From Phallusia mammillata (Eukaryota): a stretch of 64,000 nt of DNA. Location of the stretch: assembly GCA_965637545.1 (NCBI GenBank), contig OZ281498.1, positions 13,268,001 through 13,332,000 of the forward strand, given 5' to 3'. Under the pieces are notes generated by a model. That model was not told the origin of the DNA. It saw only the letters and a program-made list of their open reading frames with translations, and made no database searches. Shown here one piece after another: positions 2,715-19,200 of the stretch. The position numbers and the translations under genes were made by a program. Position 1 is the stretch's first letter. The number at the start of each line of letters is the position of its first letter.

Positions 2715-5700
2715 ATGTTATTCGCAATGTATAGAAAACTGTTGCAACGTATTAAAAAGAGCTACAAAGATGTCCAAGCGTCAGTCCGTTCATTACAAGC
2801 GCCTGGACGACAACCAACCGAAAAGCTTAAATACCATGATAACCAAGAAGCGAAAAGTTCGATTTGCGAAAAAAGGATACAAACGACTTACTTAAAAGTA
2901 CAGGATGCAGCTACGTCTTGTCAAAGTTTATGTGAGTGCTTCTTGTTTAACAGTACTTGAAGTCATTTGCAAAGGGCGTGTACAAATATTTCAGCAAAAT
3001 TGTACGTATTTCTGTACGGCTTCATTTTTTGAATAGATTCCAATGTATCAACGCCAAACACGGAAGACTCGTGGAAAACCTTGCTCTCAAGTCATAATTA
3101 TAAAAATTGGCTTAAAGTTGGAATGGCATTGAGGTATGAACCCCAAAATGGTGCTATAGTTGATCGATTTTAAACATTCCAATGGTCACTCAGTGCGGTT
3201 GAATAGTCAAGTTAGCAATGTTCTACAAAGGGCGTAAAAAAATAAAAATAAATGTGGGTTAAAAGTCGCATTGACGTTTCCGAAGTCTAGAAAGATATCG
3301 CTTTGGATAAACAGATCAATTGACGTGACAAAATAAGAAAACTTAGTTTTTTCGCAGAACTGCTTGTAATTACGTTTCGCCAGTCGTGGAACACATCGCC
3401 AAAATTATTCATTGCTCGTTGCTGGAAAAGTATGGTTCGCATGCTTCATTGCACAATTGGGAAAGGTAAGAAATGCGACCACCTAAAATGACCCTTTGAA
3501 ACAATTATTCCCACATATTTTTAGACGCGACCCTACTGCTTCTAAAAAATATACTTTTTAGAACTTTAGAGCGGGTTGATGCCAAACAAGATTTTAACAG
3601 TGGGTTGACAAATAACGTATGACGTCACAAACAAAATTAACCGTTTCGGGTCAAACAAAATTGTCATTAAATTATATTCTCGCAACAGTTTAAAGCCGTT
3701 TTAAAGTCTCATAGTTTAAGGCAGCAATACTCCTTTGAAACCTTTTTCAGGAATTTTGCATTCTGCATGAGCCTGCCCACATACACATGTCATGTAACTA
3801 AGCGATTTTCGTTTTTTGACAGCTCCATGTATTTACAATCTTCTTTATGAAAAAATTGAAGTGCATTTTTATGTAGAATGTAAAAAAAAACTATTATAGG
3901 GTATATATATACCAAAAAATGTTTTTTATTTCATCACAAAAAAAAAAAAAAACGGTTTGTTCGCACCCATGTATAAATATAACTTAACAAACTAATCCAA
4001 AGCCTTATTGTGGATGTTTTATCTAAAGGGCAGAGCATTTTTCAACATTTACTTGCTTTTGTGACTTAATATGTTTTTTGTTCAGTTTGTGACATCATAA
4101 ACACAAAATTGCTTTGCGAGGTATATCTCCTAATTTGCAATAGATTTGCATTGCACCCCCATGGGCTAAAGTCCAGCCGCTGAACAGAAACATTTTTGAC
4201 AACACTTCACAGATGAGAAAAAATGAAAATAAATCTCAATTAAACTTTGAAGCACTTGAATTGCTACATTTTGATTGGAAGTGTAAATAAAGCCCATTTT
4301 TAAAAATTTCCATTTAGATGTAGGGAGAAATGGATCAAAGACGTGTTTCTACTCCACAATCGCCCCCCTTCTAAATCCGCATTGTCACGAATTTGCAATG
4401 TCTCGGAGTGGCCAACGCCCCGAGGACAATGGGAAATTGCTAAGGTAAGGAAAAAAATTAAAGGTAAAGATCATTGCTTAAGTAGTATACCACAAACATT
4501 CTACCATTTTTCTCATACAGTGAACAATACACTGATAATGGATAAATAAGCTGTTGCTGCAAGGCATAGTCTAATAATTTATTAACAATTATTGCTCTTC
4601 CAGCAGATTTTTATCTGTAAAAGTAATTGGTTCGACGTCCCATACACTTCAAAAATTTGATTACTTTTTTAGGTTTTCATGGCAAACGGCTTTGACCCAG
4701 GTGGAACATCGGAGGGAGCATCCACGTTCGATGCCTCAGCACTCTTCAACTTTTTAATGCGATGTCGTCTTGTTAATGATTTTGTGGATAACTTTGATTA
4801 CGTCCGTGGCGTTTTGAAGGTAAAGGTTTAACGCTTTTTAAACAATGTCAGAAGTTGACACTGGTCACTTCAACGACTTATTTCTGGTTAATATAGACTT
4901 GTGTCAAGATCTGGTTGTGCAGAAATGTTTTTTTTTTTTTTCGAAAAACAACTTTTTTATCACTTAAGGCTGACAAGGAATTATTTACAAAGCACAGGGC
5001 AAAATTTGCATTAAAAGGCAGTGAAGTGATACCGTATTAATACCGTAAAATCGTAAGCCCGAAACTGGGGGCGTACCCGAAAACAAAACCAGTTGGGTCG
5101 GAAAGTTATTTTTTCTAAGTTGGAATTACGACACAAATGTGGAAGAATGTGATGCCAATGCAGTACGAAGCAACTGTCCAATGTGTTAAGGTTCGAAACA
5201 AAACGATGCACTGCCCGCGTTTCGAGTTTACTGACGAGGAAAGAGACGAACAGTTCGAGCACATTCTGGCCCTGTTTCAAGATGAAAGACTTAAATTTCA
5301 CGTCGATCAGTCACTTGACTCCTCAGCACTAATGAGAGATATTCTTGACGTAAGGCGCCCTCGTATCATATTTAACTTAAAGTGAAAAGACGCGGGTACA
5401 AAGTCCCGATTGGTTGTGATTAAACTTCACTACACAACTTGAAATTTGACCTTATATCGTCATAAAAAATTAATTTTGTGTACTGACCCAATGTGTTGCC
5501 GCAAAATATACCGTTTTCAAAGAAGCTCAGATTTCGCAAACCTATGAACTCTTTTTGTTGTTGTTATTAAGGGGTCTATAGGGGGCACTAGACATCGTTT
5601 GACGTGTGCAGACAAATAATCACTAATAAATACACTGATTTTACTAAACATTTTGTCAGATGTAGGTGTAAACCAGGGGTCGGCAACTTTTTTGGCACTG

Positions 5701-8700
5701 CGGACCGTTTTAAAACTGAAATTTTATAACGAACTGATCTTCAAAAAACAACAAATGTTCAGCAATGAAAAGTTATAACATCTCGTATAAGTTATTGCAA
5801 TTTGAAAGTTTACAGCCCGGTAACGAATTCCTTACCAACCAACATGGTTGCCGACCACTGACATAAACGGTGACCACAATTATAGGCGTTTTAAAGATGA
5901 CGCGTATTTTCTTCAGATTAAAACAGCTGATCTGACCATCAATGCTACAGCTCGATCGACGTTAGAAATTATTGATGGCAGAATTCTTGAGAGTCACGAA
6001 AGCGGTCTAAATCCGTCGGCTAAAACGACATCTTTAGAGGTTTGTGTGGACCGTCTGTATCTGCCCTGACCTTTTCGTCTATTCATAGAACATAGTGAAC
6101 GTTTATTATTTCTTGCAGTCGTTGAAAAAGGTCGCCTCGAAGATTCTATCTCCACCTTACGCCCAAGATGAAGCTAAGATGGTTCAGGTTTGTATATTTT
6201 GCCTAACACGTGTATAGTATATAAAGTATAGGCCTACCATAGTTCGTTGCATCAAAAAGGTAGACACACTGTTGAAACGAGAACGACAAACCTACTTTCG
6301 GGGTCAAAAGGAACAAACGCAAAATATATAGCTATTTTTTGGGCAATCAGATAATATTAAATTGTTTAGATGAAGTTTAACGTTCTGGAACTCATTTTAA
6401 ACAACAATTATTACAACTCACACTAAAAATACGTTTATTGTGCCACAAAACAGTAAGGTGAAAGGCGTATTTTTGCTGTTTGAAAGGCATAAGTGTCATA
6501 AGACATTTGGGCACTATATCAGGTCCTCGCAGGCCAATTTTTTGTTAAATAGAAGGACCTGCTGTCGTCTGAAAAGAGGACTGTTGGTGGGCCCAATGTA
6601 AAAGCTGTAAATAACAGTCCCCTAAACCGCGTATAAACAAGAAATGTTATTTTACTATTACATTATTCACGAGCCGTGATGATGTGTGGAATTAAGTTAT
6701 AATCATAACTTATGTTTTTTTCAATGTTTTGCATTGTGCCTGTTTGAAAAAATTTAATGGCAGATTTAGTGAAAGTCAATTGTGTTTAGTTGCAAAAAAG
6801 CCTTATATTGAATACTTTCTTCTTTTTCGTTTAGATTCCTGGACATCCAAACAAGAGACTTAAAACACTGGATTCCATCCTTAATGTACAGAAATGTAAG
6901 CTAACCTGTTTGCTATCGAAAAATTAACGTTCAAATTTCGAATAATATAGTTAATATTTATGTCATTTTATGCAGTGCTGGCAACCGGAGCAAAGGTTCC
7001 ATTTAGAAGTAAATCTGAAACGACAATTTCCTCACTAGTCAACAGTGGAATTTGGTCTCACATTTATCAAGCTTATCATTTTGCGTTTAATTCTGACAAA
7101 ACCACTTTATATCGACAATTCCACTCAGGACCCAATTCTTCAGTAACAACAAATAAACGCAAACACGAAAACGACGATGAAAACCAACCGTCTGGAAGCA
7201 AACCTAAAAGAAGGCGAGTCGACGAAGATACAGCTGAATGTGGATCAGTAAGTTTTGTCTTTTTTTGTGTATAAATGTTGTTAAACTGCAATGTATTGTT
7301 CCTGATGTTCAACTAAACATTATGAAAGATAATGTTAAACTACGTGCATTAGTTGATGTTATTAACTCCCTTATGACTTCAGAAGCATTAACAGTTGCCG
7401 CTCCGAATGACTCTGGCCGTCAAATCTTTTTACAGTCAATGAAAGTAAAACTTTTTATGGATTGTTGGTTGGGCGAAAATTGGGACAATTTGTAGAATAA
7501 TGTGCCGCTTGTTTTTTCAATGACTGAACTGAATAAAATCCGGTTACTTTTTAACTTATAAATCGAGTATTTAGGCAAATGTTAATCGCTGTGTTTAGCC
7601 ATCTTTTTTCATGGTAGTCTCGTAAAATGCGTCATTTACAAAGTTAAATGTGTGGGGACCCACGAATTTTTGCTTGCAGAAACAAAGTGGGATGTACAAA
7701 AACGAGTTAAAAACAAAATAAATTAGATAATAAATAAACTGTTAAGGTAAGCCATAGTATATGTGCAATGACAACATGTGCTTACCCTTGGCGTTTCTTA
7801 GTTGTCCTTTCAAATTTCGCATTAGGTAACACCATGCGAACGAGTTTAATTTTTAAATTATTATCGTTTTTCTTCATTCTAGAATCTAGACCAGTGGTTC
7901 CCAACCAGGGGGGATCTCCCCACTAGGGGGGAGTTTTGTAATTTGTATTTGTATCACAATAGTAATCTCTTACTGGTTGTCTGTGCTATGTGTTGTTGCT
8001 GCATTAAATTGCGCTTAAACAAAAAATTGCTAAACAGGAAAGAAAGAAAGGTGAAGGCGGATCTGGCGGTGGAGGAAACTATTCCTTGTATGAGGAAATG
8101 TTGAACAACTTTCTTATGTCCCAGGTCAGCGGAACTGAATTTTTAGAATTCTAGAACCATCATTAAAAATTTAACTTTATATTTGATGTGTTTAGACAAA
8201 AAACAAGGGCGCTTCGTACATACATGAAAAAGACAAACACGGAAAGTTTCTGGCCTCAGTTGATTTTGTCTCAAATTTTGCTATCATGGGAAAATACCCA
8301 AAAGAAACAATTCGAGATGCAGAACGCGAAGCTGCAGCAACGGTAACATAATTGAAAATTACCACTCAACTATTAAAATCCAAAACATATAAGCTTAATT
8401 TGCGATTCTGTGTACATTAAGTTCAATGCAATTTAGTGTTTTGTTATTGAAAATGTTTAATGTACAGCGAAAATTTGTTTGTGACCAGCAGTATATTGTT
8501 TAAGAAGATTATTAGTCACAATTTAGTTTAAACAGCACAGTTTAGTTTTGTTTTTGCTTGATTTATAGGCGTTGCAGAATCTCGGAATTAAGGTTTATAA
8601 CAAAGCTGAGGCGAAAGATTTGTTCGATACATATTGCAAAGCTGTTCCGAAAAAGTTACCGACGTACAAGACATACGAGGTCTCGACTTCGCCACACTTC

Positions 8701-10502
8701 ACCATTCTACAAATTTTCAACAACAGCACAATTTACTTTATCGAGGCTCTTGCAACAGACAAGATTTTTGTGCAAGTAAAACGATAGGTTTAAGTTAGTG
8801 ACGCACCGAAGTTTTGAAAATGCCGTTTTAGTTTTGCCCCAAAAGTTTAAAAAACAATGGATATTTCAATTGTTGCTTTTTGGTAGTGTCGGTAAATCAC
8901 TGGTTTTAATTGGTGCCGACGAGCTAGTGCAAATTTGAATTTGTCTGTAGATATGTTAAATGTATTAATAAAAAATACTTTATTTCCATTCGAGTTTCAC
9001 AAATTGCAGGCTAAATGTCGATTAACCGAAAGCAACGAGGATGACGCAGAAATCATTGTAGCAAAAATGGTTCTGGAAGAAGCCCGAATTGACACAGGAA
9101 AACTTGAAGACATTAAAGGCAATTGAAACTGTTATAAATTAATGCAAAAATGTTGTGATAATAAACAAGTTCGGAATAAGTGATTCAGGGACAATGGATA
9201 GATTTATAACTAACCTGTACCTGTACTTTTCAAACTACAAAAACTTTCACAACAAACACGTTTTTCAGGTGCTTTTACTGAATACTGTTTAAAGAACGGA
9301 GGTACCCTTCCAATTTACAACAACAAAGATGGTTTCGACATAAAAACCAATGAAAAATATCAGGAAAGCACAGCAACCTCGTTTATTCGAAACTGTCTTA
9401 CTGACAGGGCTGCATCTCCTGAGGAGTTGGCCGATTTAGAAGTTGACAGTGAAGTCGACTTTTACACTTCCGACCTTCATTATGCAGATCTATTTGAAAC
9501 AACCTCTGTGCTGGTGCGTGTGCTCATAGTGTTACATTTGACAATTGGCCCACGAGGGCCAGAGACAAACGCATTTACGTTGCAATTTTTATCGAACAGC
9601 CACAACGCAGTCGCCGAAAGTCAGAAGAGGCGGCATCACGCAATGCATTGGAGAAATATGGTTTTGATATTTCGCAATGTGAAGGCAGCAACTTTAAGTC
9701 GACGTTAAACGATTACTGCCAACAATGGGACTTTAGTCTCGCCTATCATACCTTTCAAGTAAGCCGCATCGAATTTTGCTGCAGTAAAAATAGCTCCGGT
9801 TGATTCATCGTTTTCTGGTCCAGTGCTCTTCAACATTTGGTTTGGTGAACCCTTAAAGTTGTTGTGACAAACTCATGCACCCTGTTTGGTCTCGACGTAC
9901 ATTAACGAGCAGCCGTATTTTTGATCAAAAACCTTTGACGTAAATTAACGTCAATCCGCACTCTGCGCAAAACGTCTTTTGCGTAGATATACGTCAACCG
10001 CACTAAAAGTGTTAGACATCAACATTTTTTTTAAATACAGAGGTTCATTTATACATCAGTTGAAACCTACACTTTTAATATACTGAAACTCAAATATTAA
10101 TAGTTCATTAAATGTTTGTGATGCACCCATGTATACCTTTTCGTACTGGTGCACCTCATGCATATTTTGGTGCACCATGCACACCAGTTGAAGAGCACTG
10201 GTCTAGGCATCCTTTTTGGGTGGTAGTACCTTTAAGAAGACAAAATACAAAGAAACAAAACGCCACGTCCACTGCGATCCTTATTCGACATTTAGTTAAG
10301 TTAACCGTCATGTTATTTGACACAGGTGAAGCCTCTCGTACGATACGCCAAACAATACGAGTGTGTCGTAGCAAGTCCAGCCTTGCGAGAAAGCAACCAA
10401 GAGTTTAGTGTTGCATGTGATCCAATAGGCTTTTCAACAGCCGGCGAGGCAAGAGAATCCGCAGCCAGAAACTCACTTGCCCTTCTTGGCCAACACACTT
10501 AA
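2715..10502 (+). CDS. CXorf38/DUF4559-like HEPN-domain protein with bipartite NLS and about three C-terminal dsRBD-like repeats
   Basis: Phase-compatible exons: ~2715-2931, 3038-3132, 3358-3465, 4318-4444, 4673-4819, 5191-5349, 5917-6039, 6119-6187, 6835-6895, 6976-7247, 8038-8124, 8196-8342, 8569-~8775, 9010-9118, 9269-9513, 10326-10502. N-terminal motifs NYKNWLKVG, CNVSEWP..QWEIAKVFM, FDASALFNFL and VRNKTMH parallel recalled CXorf38 motifs (EYKNWVKAG, WEVAKAFM, CDAVALLSLI, CRNEIMH). C-terminal helices DAEREAAATALQNLG, DAEIIVAKMVLE and EARESAARNSLALLG resemble dsRBD helix 2. Start codon and the 8569-9268 junctions are less certain. Confidence 0.78.
5674..5860. mobile_element. Degenerate hAT-type MITE in an intron
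   Basis: Ends CAGGGGTCGGCAAC / GTTGCCGACCACTG; flanks GTGTAAAC / ACATAAAC match only partly. Confidence 0.6.
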
Positions 10503-10960
10503 TTTACGACATTCTTACTCAGTACAAACAAGTAAAAGGCATTTTTTATTTTATTTTTGAACAACAAACGTATTGCACAAACAAATTTGAAAGTGACCAA
10601 AGTTAACCAAGCTTGTTCTAACAAAACATGTGATTTCGGTTCAAAACTTTTTTAACGTTGACTTCAAAATTTCAAACAAGATATATTTACAAAATAAAAT
10701 CCACTAACATACAGCAATGAAATGTAATATGCAATCGGTAATGACCAGTCTTATAAGCAAAAGATTGTACTGTGAGATGGTACTGTTTGTGCAACACATA
10801 CTTTCAATTCATTAAATTAATTTAAAATATCATGTGACCTTGCCTGAATGTACACTATAGATGTAGAACCAATATCGGCAACATAACAATAATAGACAAA
10901 ACACATTCATCATATTTGTAACACATATAACAAAATAATAAAAGTAAACAAGTTGAAAAA

Positions 10961-13142
10961 CTAGTCCAATTTCATTCTTTGTGTAGTCATGCGATATATG
11001 ATGCTATCCCTGCCTGGGTCCATGAACCAAATAAAATAGGAGGAACCAAGAACAGCAAGAGCAATTGCCACTGTAATCCATATAGCTATATTGATGTAGA
11101 TGGCATACTCAGCCATTACTGGCTCTTCAACAAAACCTTCCAAAACTTCTGCAACATCTGCTGTGGCCATTAGACTTCTTGTGCGACGTACTTGAAGAAA
11201 TTCGCGCTTAACTTCACCAGCAATGTTAACTTCGGCTAACAGTTGGTTGTCATACAATTTGTTGAAGCTTGCTGTAAACTAAAACAAAGAAGCCCTTTGA
11301 ATATCTGACCAAAATTGTATCAAGATTTGTACTTTAAAAAACTCTTAAGCAAAAAAATCTTGCAATCTTTGTTTTTATGCCTTATACTGTGGATGGAGGT
11401 TTAGATGTTTGTGAATGTGCATAAACATACACTAACACTGTTTGAAGGATAATTACCTCAGGAATAAACTTCTCCAAAAGTCGCAAGGCTTCTTTCACTT
11501 GACATGACTGTTCGCCATATGTCTTAACTAATGCATCAACACCACTGATTGTAAAATAATAACTGTCAGGCACTTGGTCGTCAACACTAGATTTATCAAT
11601 CTGCAACTGGAAATAACAAAATGTGAGAAATATGTTAAACAATAGTTAAGTGTACATCTTCAATCAAACCAACCAGAGACAGTATATCCTTCATGGTTTG
11701 AATTTCTCCAAGAAGCAAGACATCAGTTTCTTGAGTAACATTTAAACAAGATGCTGGATCCAAACTAGCTATAAAGGAATCAGCCTTGGCAAGGCGATCT
11801 TTCATGTCAAAAAAGGTTACTGGCAAATCATTCAAAACTCCAGTATTGTAAGAGAGGATATTGAAAACCTATAAATATGTCATTAGAACATTTGGAAATC
11901 GGGCATTACAGACAACCAATTCTGATTACATTTTGTTCTTGTTCAAAATCCACAATCACAGGTTTTTTCTCGGAACTTGCATGATAAATTGCAGCATTGG
12001 TTTCTTCAAGAGATGGTGCTGCTCCACCGGAGCCTTTTATTATGAACTTGGCTTTAAACTAAACACGAAATAAGTTTAAAAAGTGTAAGTTTATGTCCAC
12101 AAGTCCCCCTCTCCCCCAAAAAAATGTTTTTAACACAACAACAGTTCCAGAAAGAAAAAAGGTTTTGTGCAGTATGAGTTGTAAACTATTGGTTACGAAA
12201 CTTCAAACATTGCCTGTACACAGCTAATTTCAAACTGAAGAAAATTATGTGATATATACAGTAAACCTCAGTTATACCGGATTTGCTGTAGGTTTGCTGT
12301 ATTAAAGTGAGGTTTGTCGTATTAAATCAAACGTGAAACAACAAAGTGACTTACCTCAGTAACAGAAATGTCAGATGGGCTTGGAACATGCAAATTGATA
12401 AACAGGTTTGCTTTTGGGCGGTTGAATATGTCGAGTGCCTTAACACCTACACAAAAAATTCAATATGTGATTGTTAAGTTTTTCCACCAAATCCTCTTAT
12501 TTATTTGATATTAGAAGTCCTCTACTTTCTCACACTATATGTGTAGAACATCACTGTGCCGAATGTATGCTACTAAACTTAACATGAACACAAAAACTCC
12601 ATCATTCATGCAACAATAGTACTTTTAAACTACACTGCCTTTTTGGCATTAAACGTTGATCATATTCATAATCCAACCTTTTCCACACATAAAAAGGTAG
12701 CTTGTGTTCTAGGTTAAAGCACCTTAAAATAAAAGCTTTTATTGTTGTTTTAAAAATTGCTTGGTTAGAGAACATTTAATAAGCTGTATATATGACTATG
12801 AGGACTTTATTTATGAAACAATAGATCACAATTTTTACCAGTCCATGAAGTGATTTTGTGTGTTGAAAATCCCATCATGTAGCTAATCATGTGGCTAACA
12901 TCACCAACATCAATAGCTTCTCCATTCTTTGAAAGTTCAATGCTTGGAGGAACTGATAGAAAATATAAATCACCACGGCAGTGTGACAATAAACCTGAAA
13001 CAGTAATAAACACATTGTAAAACGGCAAACCAACTGTCTTCTGGAGTTATTGCCAAAGTGGTGATTTAACAACAAACAACATTAAACTAACGGAAAATAA
13101 CTTACCACAGAGGAATAACAATCCAGCTGATAGCGATTTCAT
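10961..13142 (-). CDS. ATP6AP2: (Pro)renin receptor / V-ATPase accessory protein 2, 7 coding exons
   Basis: Exons 13142-13106, 12994-12839, 12446-12355, 12058-11930, 11868-11674, ~11606-11457, 11278-10961. Signal peptide, DIFNRPKA motif, furin-type RRTR site, TM helix and tail MDPGRDSIIYRMTTQRMKLD. Confidence 0.95.
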
Positions 13143-16281: not shown

Positions 16282-19200
16282 TCACGTCTTGCGCTTCTTG
16301 GCATCACTTCGGTTTGCAACTGCAATATCGCATAAGCTTGGTTCCTTGAACATCTGAACTGTGGATACCAAAAAATTTATGTTAAAAGTGTATTCGTTTA
16401 TACAAGCTCGGTAAATAACCCTATTTAAATTCAGTGGGTTGTGCATATTTTAGATGTAAAAATCAGACTTGATGTTAAAATATTTACCTTCGATTGGACG
16501 AGGAACAAAATGTGTACAAGTTTTGTGCTTTTTAGCACGCGATCCTTTTACTGGAATTCCATCTTTTCCGAGACCGATATTCCACGGTCTGCCGCTTTCT
16601 AGTTGTTTGTACAAACATGATGTGTACACCACGTAATAGTTCTCATACACTGATTCCTTGAACTTGCATTCAGACGAGTAGGAATCCTAAACAATAAATT
16701 TATTTACGACGGGTTTGAGGATACCTGAAACTTTTTTTATTTCGAGCTTTTTTGAGATAAAAAGAGTCATGGGATACACATTTTTCAAAATTTGCAGGTT
16801 ATTCCTTAATTAAACGTGATAAAACGTTTCAGTGCTATGACAGTTACCGTTGTGTAGAGTCTTCCCTCGTTGTTCATGGCAACATACAGCAATGTGTCTC
16901 GATGCTGTATTGAAACGATTCGAAGTCCAACAGGAATAAGATAGAACACAGTGGCATCCCCATCTTCGGGAATTCCGTACACGCTGCCATTTTCCCGATC
17001 AACGGATAAATAGAAGCCTTGTCGCGAGAGCAACTGTGTCTTCACACCCTTTAGTTGAGGTTCTAGAAATATAAAGTATATGTTTACCGCACTTTTAGGC
17101 ATAAAACCCAATCCTTATGGAAAGCAGATTAACGGCTCAAATAACGTTAAAGTGAACACTGGCAAGAGCCACGAAAGAAATCAATACAATTAATATTTAA
17201 CGAGACTTCAGTCACCCTGGGAAGAATAAAATCTCTAATTAATGTAGTTTGTCTTGAAAAATACGCCTGGGGAAAAATATTATAATCTCCATTTCATTCT
17301 GATGCAGTCTTAATATATTCTGTTTATGTTTACAACAAAAGGCGGGTATAGACTGTCGATTGACACCATTTACTTCGCAATATTTTGATTTAGAGGCAGC
17401 TATGTCCTACCACGATGGCTCCCTGAGCTGTATTCTTCGTGTCTGCCTATTAAAATCGCCGCTTCGTCCATGAAGATTGTCAACAATCCACAAATTTGTC
17501 AAACGAGAAAAGTTTGTTGCAAACCAAATACAAAACTCGAACGCAACATCACCAAGCCCAAGGCAAACTTCACAACCAAAAGTTGAACTGAATAGCGACA
17601 ATATGGGCATCGCCATCCATACCTTATGACTGTTTAATATTTAAGAGGCTTTTTGAGTGTAGAAGGTTAAACCGACATAAGCGGCATTTATTTTTGTGGC
17701 CTTTGGGAAGAAATTTGATGCTGGTATGCACGTTTTCATCCTACAGAAAGTTGAATAATTCATCGCGCGCCGTCGCTGTCAAACCAGCAGCGCATAACAA
17801 GTACCTGCAAAGTCAGTCAAACTTTTCTGGATCATCAAGTATTCATCATTAACACGTCAAGCAAAATTTAATATATTTTACCTTACTTCGTACCTTTGAC
17901 AGCTTTATTTTGGCCTGTAGATTTAAACTTCTCCATGTTCACATCACCCTGAAGGCTACCGAAGTCCAACTACAATTCGATGCAAACTCAATACGATATC
18001 CTTGTGTTACAGCTATGCCTTCAACCCTAACTTACTCACTGTGGTGGCGCAGGCTTAATGTAGAACGACTCAGTTGGCCTAGGACTGCTGTATATTTTGT
18101 CAAGAACAAAATCACAGTCCGCGACGGTTCTTGCAGTAAGGCGTGTCCGCTTTCAGTAACCCTCCAGTGTTCATGAATATTTCAGTACACAACCTGGCGG
18201 AAAAGCGTTATATTCTGCTAATTTACCGCACACGATAGCATGAAGCAGCGCCGAAGCAATTTTCAAAACAAGCAACCGATCGATGGAAAGCGAATTCGAT
18301 CGACCAAGTTTATAATTCTCTGCAACCAGCGCGTTGTAGACCAAGCACAAAACGACGTAATTGTCCTGGAGCATAGAGCGTTCAAAACAACAAAGCTCGT
18401 GGCATAAGGAGAGACTTGAAGGACGTTGGTATGTGCGTAAACCACACGTGAAAATCACGACCTGACAAGATTAATTTACTTTAGTGTTACGGTGCCTGGA
18501 AATAAATGCCTGGAAAACACGGTTTAACCTATTCGCTATTTTGCGAATGAATTTTCGCGAAAATGTATTAATCTTTTATAGCTCGCTTTAATTAGATGCT
18601 GGGCATGAATAATGTAATAAAAAACACCCAATAGCATATTGGCTAAAACGTAATGAAGCTGTATTAAACTGCGTCGTGGTATGCGCGACTGTAAAGTATC
18701 ATAACTAATCGACAGAATTTAGCTACAGAACCACAACAAGAACAACTGAACAAACTTTAACAATTTGAATCAAAATTAACTTACCAACATTCACAGTACC
18801 AGTTTTGTTAGTCATAGTAAACGTCCTGACCATGTACACATGTATAAACAACGTAAATGAAGAAAACGCAAGCAATATATACATATCGGAAAATATGTTT
18901 ATTGCATACATACAATAAGTGCAACAATTGTATTCTTGCAGCAATAATCAAACTTTGAATAGGATTATCCCCACGGACCAGGCAAAACAAGCGAAGAATT
19001 TAGTTTTATCGATTATTACGAAAAAGTACAATTAGATGCGAACTTAAAGGTACAAAATAAATTAATGAAACTAACCTCGTCTGTTTACAATAATTTCAAA
19101 AGTAAAGAAATTTTTTTGCTTGCAAGGTAGGAATATTCAGGATTTGTAATTTGATTTTTCGGACTTATGTGTAGCTGTTTCATTAATGGTTTTGTTGAAA

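What the first reader, a model, noticed from the sequence alone, without database searches (positions are those of the whole stretch)
2715..13142. CXorf38-like gene lies tail-to-tail with ATP6AP2, as CXorf38 does on human Xp11.4
Seen: the two genes are convergent with stop codons about 460 bp apart. Known (recalled): human ATP6AP2 and CXorf38 are convergent near-neighbours at Xp11.4. Inference: this gene is the positional orthologue of CXorf38, so either vertebrates lost the dsRBD module or this lineage gained it. Either way it hints at a dsRNA-related function for an uncharacterised human gene.
Basis: partly seen in the sequence, partly recalled or inferred. Interest (0 to 1): 0.78.

Follow-up and report, generated by a model that had tools for sequence, protein, structure and literature searches.

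The report
Sea-squirt CXorf38 gene beside ATP6AP2
A sea-squirt gene of the CXorf38 family (a predicted RNA-cutting HEPN domain, probably followed by double-stranded-RNA-binding modules) lies tail-to-tail with ATP6AP2 as in mammals; the gene order looks truly old, but the functional hint was already published in 2013.

Summary
A multi-exon plus-strand gene carries four colinear DUF4559 (CXorf38 family) pieces with an intact HEPN R-x4-H motif. Downstream exons resemble dsRBDs. It stops at 10500-10502. ATP6AP2 on the minus strand stops at 10961-10963, 458 bp away.

The genome is a tunicate, because it has a cellulose synthase gene with a GH6 exon. The HEPN gene is single copy in it.

The same convergent pair, ATP6AP2's last exon facing the last dsRBD-like exon, occurs in two divergent relatives found as metagenome contigs. 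Their gaps are about 560 bp and 6.5 kb. Papers give the human order ATP6AP2, MPC1L, CXorf38 and a matching mouse arrangement. Five spiralian genomes show no DUF4559 gene within 10 kb of ATP6AP2.

Positional orthology is therefore likely. Fish, lamprey and amphioxus could not be tested, and no DUF4559 tree could be built.

The functional idea is not new. Anantharaman et al. 2013 described CXorf38 as a HEPN family fused to dsRBDs in several deuterostome groups and proposed dsRNA targeting.

The dsRBD assignment rests on several weak but concordant signals. Whether all exons form one transcript is unproven, because no RNA data were available. I did not search or fold the joined spliced protein.

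The parts
3084..3150 (+). N-terminal DUF4559 piece (YKNWLKVG...) in open frame 3033-3170. There is no in-frame ATG upstream, so the start codon and 5' end are undetermined.
   Evidence: Pfam PF15112 profile positions 2-18, E=0.023. The donor at 3150 is phase-compatible with the next exon.
3384..3465 (+). Predicted exon with Cys/His-rich sequence. It may be a remnant of the Zn-ribbon insert.
   Evidence: Strong acceptor and a gtaaga donor. Phase-compatible with its neighbours. No family match. Prediction only.
4318..4444 (+). DUF4559 exon (…CREKWIKDV…WEIAK).
   Evidence: PF15112 profile positions 72-120, E=0.0068. Donor AAG|gtaagg.
4673..4819 (+). DUF4559 exon.
   Evidence: PF15112 profile positions 110-153, E=0.0042. 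Consensus acceptor and donor.
5146..5349 (+). HEPN core exon.
   Evidence: PF15112 profile positions 145-183, 25.1 bits. 72% identical to contig L002 and 49% to L003. Single copy in the genome.
5194..5211 (+). R-N-K-T-M-H, the R-x4-H catalytic motif of HEPN RNases.
   Evidence: Read from the sequence. R and H are kept in L002 (RNNTMH) and L003 (RNRTMH).
5917..6039 (+). Conserved exon after the HEPN core.
   Evidence: 64% identity over 53 aa to L002.
6119..6187 (+). Small conserved exon.
   Evidence: 10 of 19 residues shared with L002. Pyrimidine-rich acceptor.
6976..7247 (+). Predicted exon with a basic, nuclear-localisation-like stretch (KRKHE…KPKRRR).
   Evidence: Open frame. Perfect gtaagt donor. 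Chosen by my exon-chaining script. No homologue was available to confirm it.
8038..9118 (+). Exons of dsRBD-like modules 1 and 2: 8038-8124, 8196-8342, 8569-8775, 9010-9118. A TGA at 9124-9126 and an AATAAA at 9160-9165 follow. Continuing downstream needs a GC-AG intron at 9119-9268.
   Evidence: Splice sites and exon chaining. Weak dsRBD alignments in the correct register.
9269..9513 (+). dsRBD-like module 3, helix 1 and strands, followed by an acidic loop.
   Evidence: hhalign against six genuine dsRBDs of this genome gives P=0.0012, aligning FTEYCLKNGGTLPIYN to profile positions 5-19.
9600..9758 (+). Exon holding helix 2 of module 3 and helix 1 plus strand 1 of module 4.
   Evidence: Pfam dsrm positions 48-65, E=0.2. 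All ten best named ESM-Atlas feature hits are dsrm, best score 0.88. Homologous exon in L022 at 17405-17650, E=1e-5, with the same exon end.
10326..10502 (+). Last exon (rest of module 4) with the TAA stop.
   Evidence: 49% identity to L006 (E=1.6e-15) and 54% to L022 (E=7e-12). AlphaFold model has pLDDT 77 with strand, strand, long helix. The top weak Foldseek rows are dsRBDs.
10503..10960 (.). 458-bp spacer between the two stop codons. Poly(A) signals suggest the two 3' UTRs overlap.
   Evidence: AATAAA at 10693 on the plus strand. On the minus strand the signal reads TTTATT at 10545-10550. The overlap is inferred, not observed.
10961..13142 (-). ATP6AP2, also called (pro)renin receptor or V-ATPase accessory protein 2.
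   Evidence: Renin_r 75 bits. RENR_N on exons 12810-13046, 11638-11868 and 11385-11645. tblastn of metazoan ATP6AP2 proteins.

Best explanation
The plus-strand gene is the single tunicate member of the CXorf38 (DUF4559) family. [quoted passage not shown] A conserved middle part follows, and then probably four divergent dsRBD-like modules.

It lies tail-to-tail with ATP6AP2. I read this arrangement as inherited from the common ancestor of tunicates and vertebrates, which makes the gene the positional orthologue of mammalian CXorf38. Mammalian CXorf38 would then be a form that lost the dsRBD array.

Inferred mechanism, not shown: the dsRBD-like modules hold the protein on double-stranded or highly structured RNA. 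There two HEPN domains pair to form the active site, as in other HEPN RNases, and cut RNA. The role would be RNA surveillance or antiviral defence.
For: - Four colinear DUF4559 matches and the Renin_r match.
- RNKTMH motif, with R and H kept in two relatives.
- Single copy in this genome.
- Tunicate identity: cellulose synthase and GH6 exons lie 2.8 kb apart on one strand.
- Convergent pairing with ATP6AP2 is repeated in L006 (gap about 560 bp) and L022 (gap about 6.5 kb). These two group with the window in the ATP6AP2 tree with 100/99 support.
- Human order ATP6AP2, MPC1L, CXorf38, MED14.
- In mouse, 1810030O07Rik is on the minus strand and Atp6ap2 sits at the edge of the same domain with its promoter outside it.
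- dsRBD signals.
- A continuous in-frame exon chain exists.
- HEPN-dsRBD fusions in this family are published.
Against: - No RNA evidence.
- The chain needs a GC-AG intron just before a stop codon followed by a poly(A) signal.
- No dsRBD match reaches a curated threshold.
- The partial AlphaFold model gave no significant fold match.
- The HEPN exons were not found on L006 or L022, so in those species only the dsRBD end of the gene is shown next to ATP6AP2.
- MED14 is on another contig and BCOR was not detected.
- Intermediate chordate lineages were not tested.
- Human strand orientation rests on my own recall.
Confidence: 0.65

Rival explanations
1. There are two transcription units or isoforms. 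A DUF4559 protein with modules 1-2 ends at the TGA at 9124-9126. Exons 9269-10502 belong to a separate downstream transcript, for example the second gene of a tunicate operon, and it is that gene which is paired with ATP6AP2.
For: A stop at 9124-9126 followed 34 nt later by AATAAA. With GT donors only, no good chain enters the strong acceptor at 9269. Relatives L006 and L022 show only the last one or two exons beside ATP6AP2.
Against: The frame from 9269 onward has no in-frame ATG. A GC donor resembling AG|GCAAGT gives an in-frame join that also fits the domain layout, and it is the best-scoring chain. HEPN-dsRBD fusions are known in this family.
Confidence: 0.2
2. The adjacency to ATP6AP2 arose by chance or independently, and the gene is not the one-to-one orthologue of X-linked CXorf38.
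For: Only this one pair is shared. MED14 lies elsewhere and BCOR was not found. Five spiralians lack the pairing. A scan of many windows can turn up one or two chance pairs (my estimate).
Against: Same neighbour and same convergent orientation in mammals and in three members of the tunicate clade. Single-copy family member. The same window holds a second vertebrate-like arrangement, noted by another reader.
Confidence: 0.1
3. The C-terminal modules are not RNA binders. They are degenerate dsRBD-like folds used for protein contacts, or they are not dsRBDs at all, so no link to dsRNA follows.
For: No Pfam dsrm hit at threshold. The best weak structural rows are protein-binding dsRBDs such as Loquacious dsRBD3, R2D2 and DRB7.2. 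VIA-align Z is below 4.
Against: Independent weak signals all point to dsRBD in the correct register: RNase III dsRBD, profile comparisons at P=0.005 and 0.0012, and ESM-Atlas features with ten of ten best named hits in dsrm.
Confidence: 0.2

Closest known systems
CXorf38 family of HEPN domains (Pfam DUF4559; Anantharaman et al. 2013, PMC3710099)
   Same: DUF4559 matches in colinear order. An intact R-x4-H motif. C-terminal dsRBD-type modules, as published for vertebrate, cephalochordate and hemichordate members. Neighbour of ATP6AP2, as for the human and mouse genes.
   Different: Mammalian CXorf38 has no dsRBDs. The Zn ribbon said to be inserted in the HEPN domain could not be recognised here. 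The dsRBD-like modules are more divergent than typical ones.
RNase L and Ire1 (KEN-type HEPN RNases)
   Same: A HEPN nuclease joined to a sensor part. Dimerisation-dependent activity is the expected mode of action (established knowledge for these enzymes).
   Different: The sensor here would be dsRBD-like modules, not ankyrin repeats with a pseudokinase or a lumenal domain. There is no sequence relationship beyond the superfamily.
PKR, ADAR and Staufen-type tandem dsRBD proteins
   Same: An array of dsRBD-like modules tethering an effector domain.
   Different: The effector is a HEPN domain. The modules do not reach the Pfam dsrm threshold.

Membership tests
CXorf38 / DUF4559 (PF15112) | Match to the family profile | tested here: met
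   Four exon-wise matches in profile order (positions 2-18, 72-120, 110-153, 145-183) scoring 14.6, 16.4, 17.0 and 25.1 bits. Each is under the 27-bit cut-off; the rough sum is 73 bits. The joined protein was not scanned.
CXorf38 / DUF4559 (PF15112) | HEPN R-x4-6-H motif | tested here: met
   RNKTMH at 5194-5211. RNNTMH in L002 and RNRTMH in L003.
CXorf38 / DUF4559 (PF15112) | Zn ribbon inserted into the HEPN domain (Anantharaman 2013) | tested here: inconclusive
   Profile positions 18-72 found no match in any frame between 3171 and 4303. Predicted exon 3384-3465 has His and Cys residues, but no clear pair of C-x2-C knuckles.
dsRBD (PF00035 dsrm) | Profile match at the curated threshold | tested here: not met
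   Best result is 12.7 bits, E=0.2, covering helix 2 only. No hit in this contig in the whole-genome dsrm scan. The domains are split by introns, which lowers exon-wise scores.
dsRBD (PF00035 dsrm) | Alpha-beta-beta-beta-alpha fold with the helix-1 and helix-2 signatures | tested here: inconclusive
   Helix 1 and strand 1 of module 3 align at P=0.0012. Helix 2 regions align at P=0.005-0.03. RNase III dsRBD is the only PDB sequence hit, E=1.5. The AlphaFold model of the last exon shows strand, strand, long helix, with no significant fold match. ESM-Atlas features: ten of ten best named hits are dsrm.
ATP6AP2 / (pro)renin receptor | RENR_N domain plus the C-terminal Renin_r transmembrane segment | tested here: met
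   Renin_r 75 bits. RENR_N on three exons in order. Colinear tblastn matches.
Positional orthologue of mammalian CXorf38 | Convergent neighbour of ATP6AP2 in mammals | tested here: met
   From the literature only. Human order ATP6AP2, MPC1L, CXorf38 (PMC4227166). Mouse data consistent with a tail-to-tail arrangement (PMC4546214). Human strands are from my recall.
Positional orthologue of mammalian CXorf38 | Adjacency kept in intermediate lineages (other tunicates, amphioxus, lamprey, fish) | tested here: inconclusive
   Kept in two unnamed relatives of the window's clade (L006, L022). No named chordate could be reached with the capped searches. Absent within 10 kb in five spiralians.
Positional orthologue of mammalian CXorf38 | Groups with CXorf38 in a family tree rather than with a paralogous expansion | not testable with these tools
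   No full-length DUF4559 proteins could be retrieved (one search returned exon fragments only). Single copy in this genome.

The most novel reading that the evidence does not exclude
ATP6AP2 and the CXorf38-family gene have stayed tail-to-tail since before tunicates and vertebrates split because their 3' ends overlap. The resulting sense-antisense RNA duplex would be bound or cut by the gene's own dsRBD-HEPN product, coupling the expression of the two genes.
Probability: 0.04. Interest if true: 0.6.

Novelty: new member of a known kind. Interest (0 to 1): 0.28.

Why it matters
Human CXorf38 is still largely uncharacterised. A single-copy tunicate orthologue that keeps both an intact HEPN motif and RNA-binding-type modules would be a convenient protein for testing the published prediction that this family cuts double-stranded or viral RNA.

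The conserved pairing with ATP6AP2 gives a positional anchor for calling orthologues in a fast-evolving family. Beyond that, the finding adds an example to an idea already in print.

Tried and rejected
- The exhaustive protein search with the HEPN exon found only exon fragments from two relatives on 1.3-1.5 kb contigs. That allowed no tree and no synteny test from the CXorf38 side.
- I chained word searches from the ATP6AP2 last exon to full-length ATP6AP2 proteins. The listed hits were all protostomes, so no fish, lamprey, amphioxus or named tunicate locus could be fetched.
- Contig L004 (ATP6AP2 62% identical) shows no related neighbour. L019 is a transcript without a neighbour.
- HMM searches for HEPN and middle exons on L006 and L022 found nothing.
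- Fold searches with the last-exon model gave nothing significant.
- A profile of the last exon against the PDB gave only unrelated weak hits.
- Searching papers for the sample accessions found nothing.
All searches were exon by exon and by reference.
Full report
**What is there**

The window is intron-rich eukaryotic DNA with about 36% GC. Its genome has 240 Mb in 312 contigs.

On the plus strand, four open frames match Pfam DUF4559, the CXorf38 family, in colinear order:
- 3033-3170, profile positions 2-18
- 4304-4546, profile positions 72-120
- 4673-4828, profile positions 110-153
- 5119-5382, profile positions 145-183

The scores are 14.6, 16.4, 17.0 and 25.1 bits. None passes the 27-bit cut-off alone, but order and strand agree and the rough sum is 73 bits.

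The last piece carries R-N-K-T-M-H at 5194-5211, the R-x4-H signature of HEPN RNases.

On the minus strand, ATP6AP2 is unambiguous:
- Renin_r scores 75 bits on the last exon.
- RENR_N matches three upstream exons in order.
- Colinear tblastn matches come from more than 100 metazoan ATP6AP2 proteins.
- The ATG is at 13142.

The plus-strand gene ends with TAA at 10500-10502 and ATP6AP2 ends with TAG at 10963-10961. The proposed start at 2715 is unsupported.

**The organism**

I checked this. A cellulose synthase exon lies at C3:28483830-28484297 and a GH6 exon at C3:28480812-28481030, 2.8 kb apart on the same strand. From established knowledge, a cellulose synthase fused to a GH6 domain is the hallmark of tunicates among animals.

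**Gene structure**

No RNA data could be obtained, so the exon chain is a prediction.

Exons 4318-4444, 4673-4819 and 5146-5349 have consensus splice sites and compatible phases. Two short contigs from relatives conserve the HEPN exon: L002 at 72% identity and L003 at 49%. L002 also conserves the next two exons, 5917-6039 and 6119-6187. The gene therefore continues beyond the DUF4559 core.

A simple exon-chaining script finds a continuous in-frame chain down to the stop at 10502.

The weak point is at 9118. A TGA follows at 9124-9126 and an AATAAA at 9160-9165. The strong acceptor at 9269 can be entered in frame only from a GC donor at 9118|gcaatt. That is nevertheless the best-scoring chain. 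A short isoform, or two transcription units, cannot be excluded.

I did not search or fold the joined spliced protein. All searches were exon by exon and by reference.

**Are the C-terminal modules dsRBDs?**

No exon reaches a curated threshold. Several independent weak signals point the same way and fall in the correct register:
- A profile of the repeat halves hits only the dsRBD of RNase III in the PDB, E=1.5.
- It aligns to a profile of six genuine dsRBDs of this genome at P=0.005.
- Exon 9269-9513 aligns its FTEYCLKNGGTLPIYN to helix 1 and strand 1 of that profile at P=0.0012.
- Exon 9531-9758 gives Pfam dsrm positions 48-65 at E=0.2.
- For the same exon, all ten best named ESM-Atlas feature hits are dsrm, best score 0.88.
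- An AlphaFold model of the last exon (pLDDT 77) shows strand, strand, long helix. Eight of its 33 weak Foldseek rows are dsRBDs, led by Loquacious dsRBD3.

No fold match is significant. I call the modules dsRBD-like and probable, not proven.

**Orthology and synteny**

The HEPN exon and the last exon are each single copy in the genome. The gene is therefore not part of a lineage-specific expansion.

Two metagenome contigs carry the same arrangement:
- In L006, ATP6AP2's last exon (56% identity) faces a homologue of the window's last exon (49% over 59 aa, E=1.6e-15). The stops are about 560 bp apart.
- In L022, part of a 308-kb contig, ATP6AP2's last exon faces homologues of both the last exon (54%, E=7e-12) and the penultimate exon (E=1e-5, same exon end). 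They lie about 6.5 kb away.

In a tree of the ATP6AP2 C-terminus, the window, L006 and L022 form a clade with 100/99 support. The HEPN exons were not found on either contig, so in those species only the dsRBD end of the gene is shown beside ATP6AP2.

For mammals I relied on papers:
- A list of genes in chromosomal order gives BCOR, ATP6AP2, MPC1L, CXorf38, MED14 (PMC4227166).
- In mouse, 1810030O07Rik is on the minus strand. Atp6ap2 sits at the border of the same topological domain with its promoter outside it (PMC4546214). That fits a tail-to-tail arrangement.

The pairing was not found within 10 kb of ATP6AP2 in Owenia, Lottia, Lineus, Liolophura or Solemya. In the window's own genome MED14 lies on another contig and BCOR was not detected. 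Only the pair is shared, not a wider block.

Fish, lamprey, amphioxus and named tunicates could not be reached. My capped searches from the ATP6AP2 side listed only protostomes.

**What is already known**

Anantharaman et al. 2013 (PMC3710099) defined CXorf38 as a HEPN family predicted to be catalytically active, with an inserted Zn ribbon. They listed Ciona among its hosts.

They reported fusions to dsRBDs in vertebrates, cephalochordates and hemichordates. They also proposed action on dsRNA such as viral replication intermediates.

The question of loss versus gain is largely answered in favour of loss in the mammalian gene. What this locus adds is a tunicate member with that architecture and a positional link to ATP6AP2.

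**Mechanism (inferred)**

The dsRBD-like modules would place the protein on duplex RNA. Two HEPN domains would then pair and cleave, as in other HEPN RNases.

Poly(A) signals at 10693 on the plus strand and 10545-10550 on the minus strand suggest that the two 3' UTRs overlap. The tight spacing alone could explain why the pair resists rearrangement.

**Verdict**

Positional orthology is likely but incompletely tested. The functional implication is not novel.

Noticed in passing
L010:1-21740 (Owenia fusiformis, GCA_903813345.2): A 3306-aa gene with ankyrin repeats and a PUFD domain (BCOR-like) lies head-to-head just upstream of ATP6AP2. This matches the human order BCOR, ATP6AP2 (PMC4227166). 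That pairing may be older than the one with CXorf38. In the tunicate window an FGF gene sits in that position instead.
   Followed up: partly
window:16453-17114 (-): Two exons of an FGF gene (Pfam FGF, E=2.6e-13 and 2.7e-9) lie upstream of ATP6AP2.
   Followed up: partly
window:291-2144 (+): A C1q-domain gene (Pfam C1q, E=2.3e-6) lies immediately upstream of the CXorf38-like gene.
   Followed up: partly
window:59575-62389 (-): A YEATS-domain gene (Pfam YEATS, E=6.5e-18) with a long serine-rich exon.
   Followed up: partly
window:23281-23613 (+): An open frame with a weak CIDE-N match (E=3e-4, below the cut-off).
   Followed up: no
G000:C3:28480812-28484297 (-): Cellulose synthase and GH6 exons on one strand, 2.8 kb apart. 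This is the tunicate-type cellulose synthase gene. I used it here only to confirm the taxon.
   Followed up: partly
L020:679-15227 (Liolophura sinensis): Two ATP6AP2 genes in tandem in a chiton.
   Followed up: no
window:9119-9268: A possible GC-AG intron whose donor sits six bases before an in-frame stop, followed by a poly(A) signal. This could act as a switch between a short and a long isoform.
   Followed up: partly
L006:10858-11287 (-): A tandem repeat that reads MGWDSHELPW in one frame, on the relative's contig.
   Followed up: no
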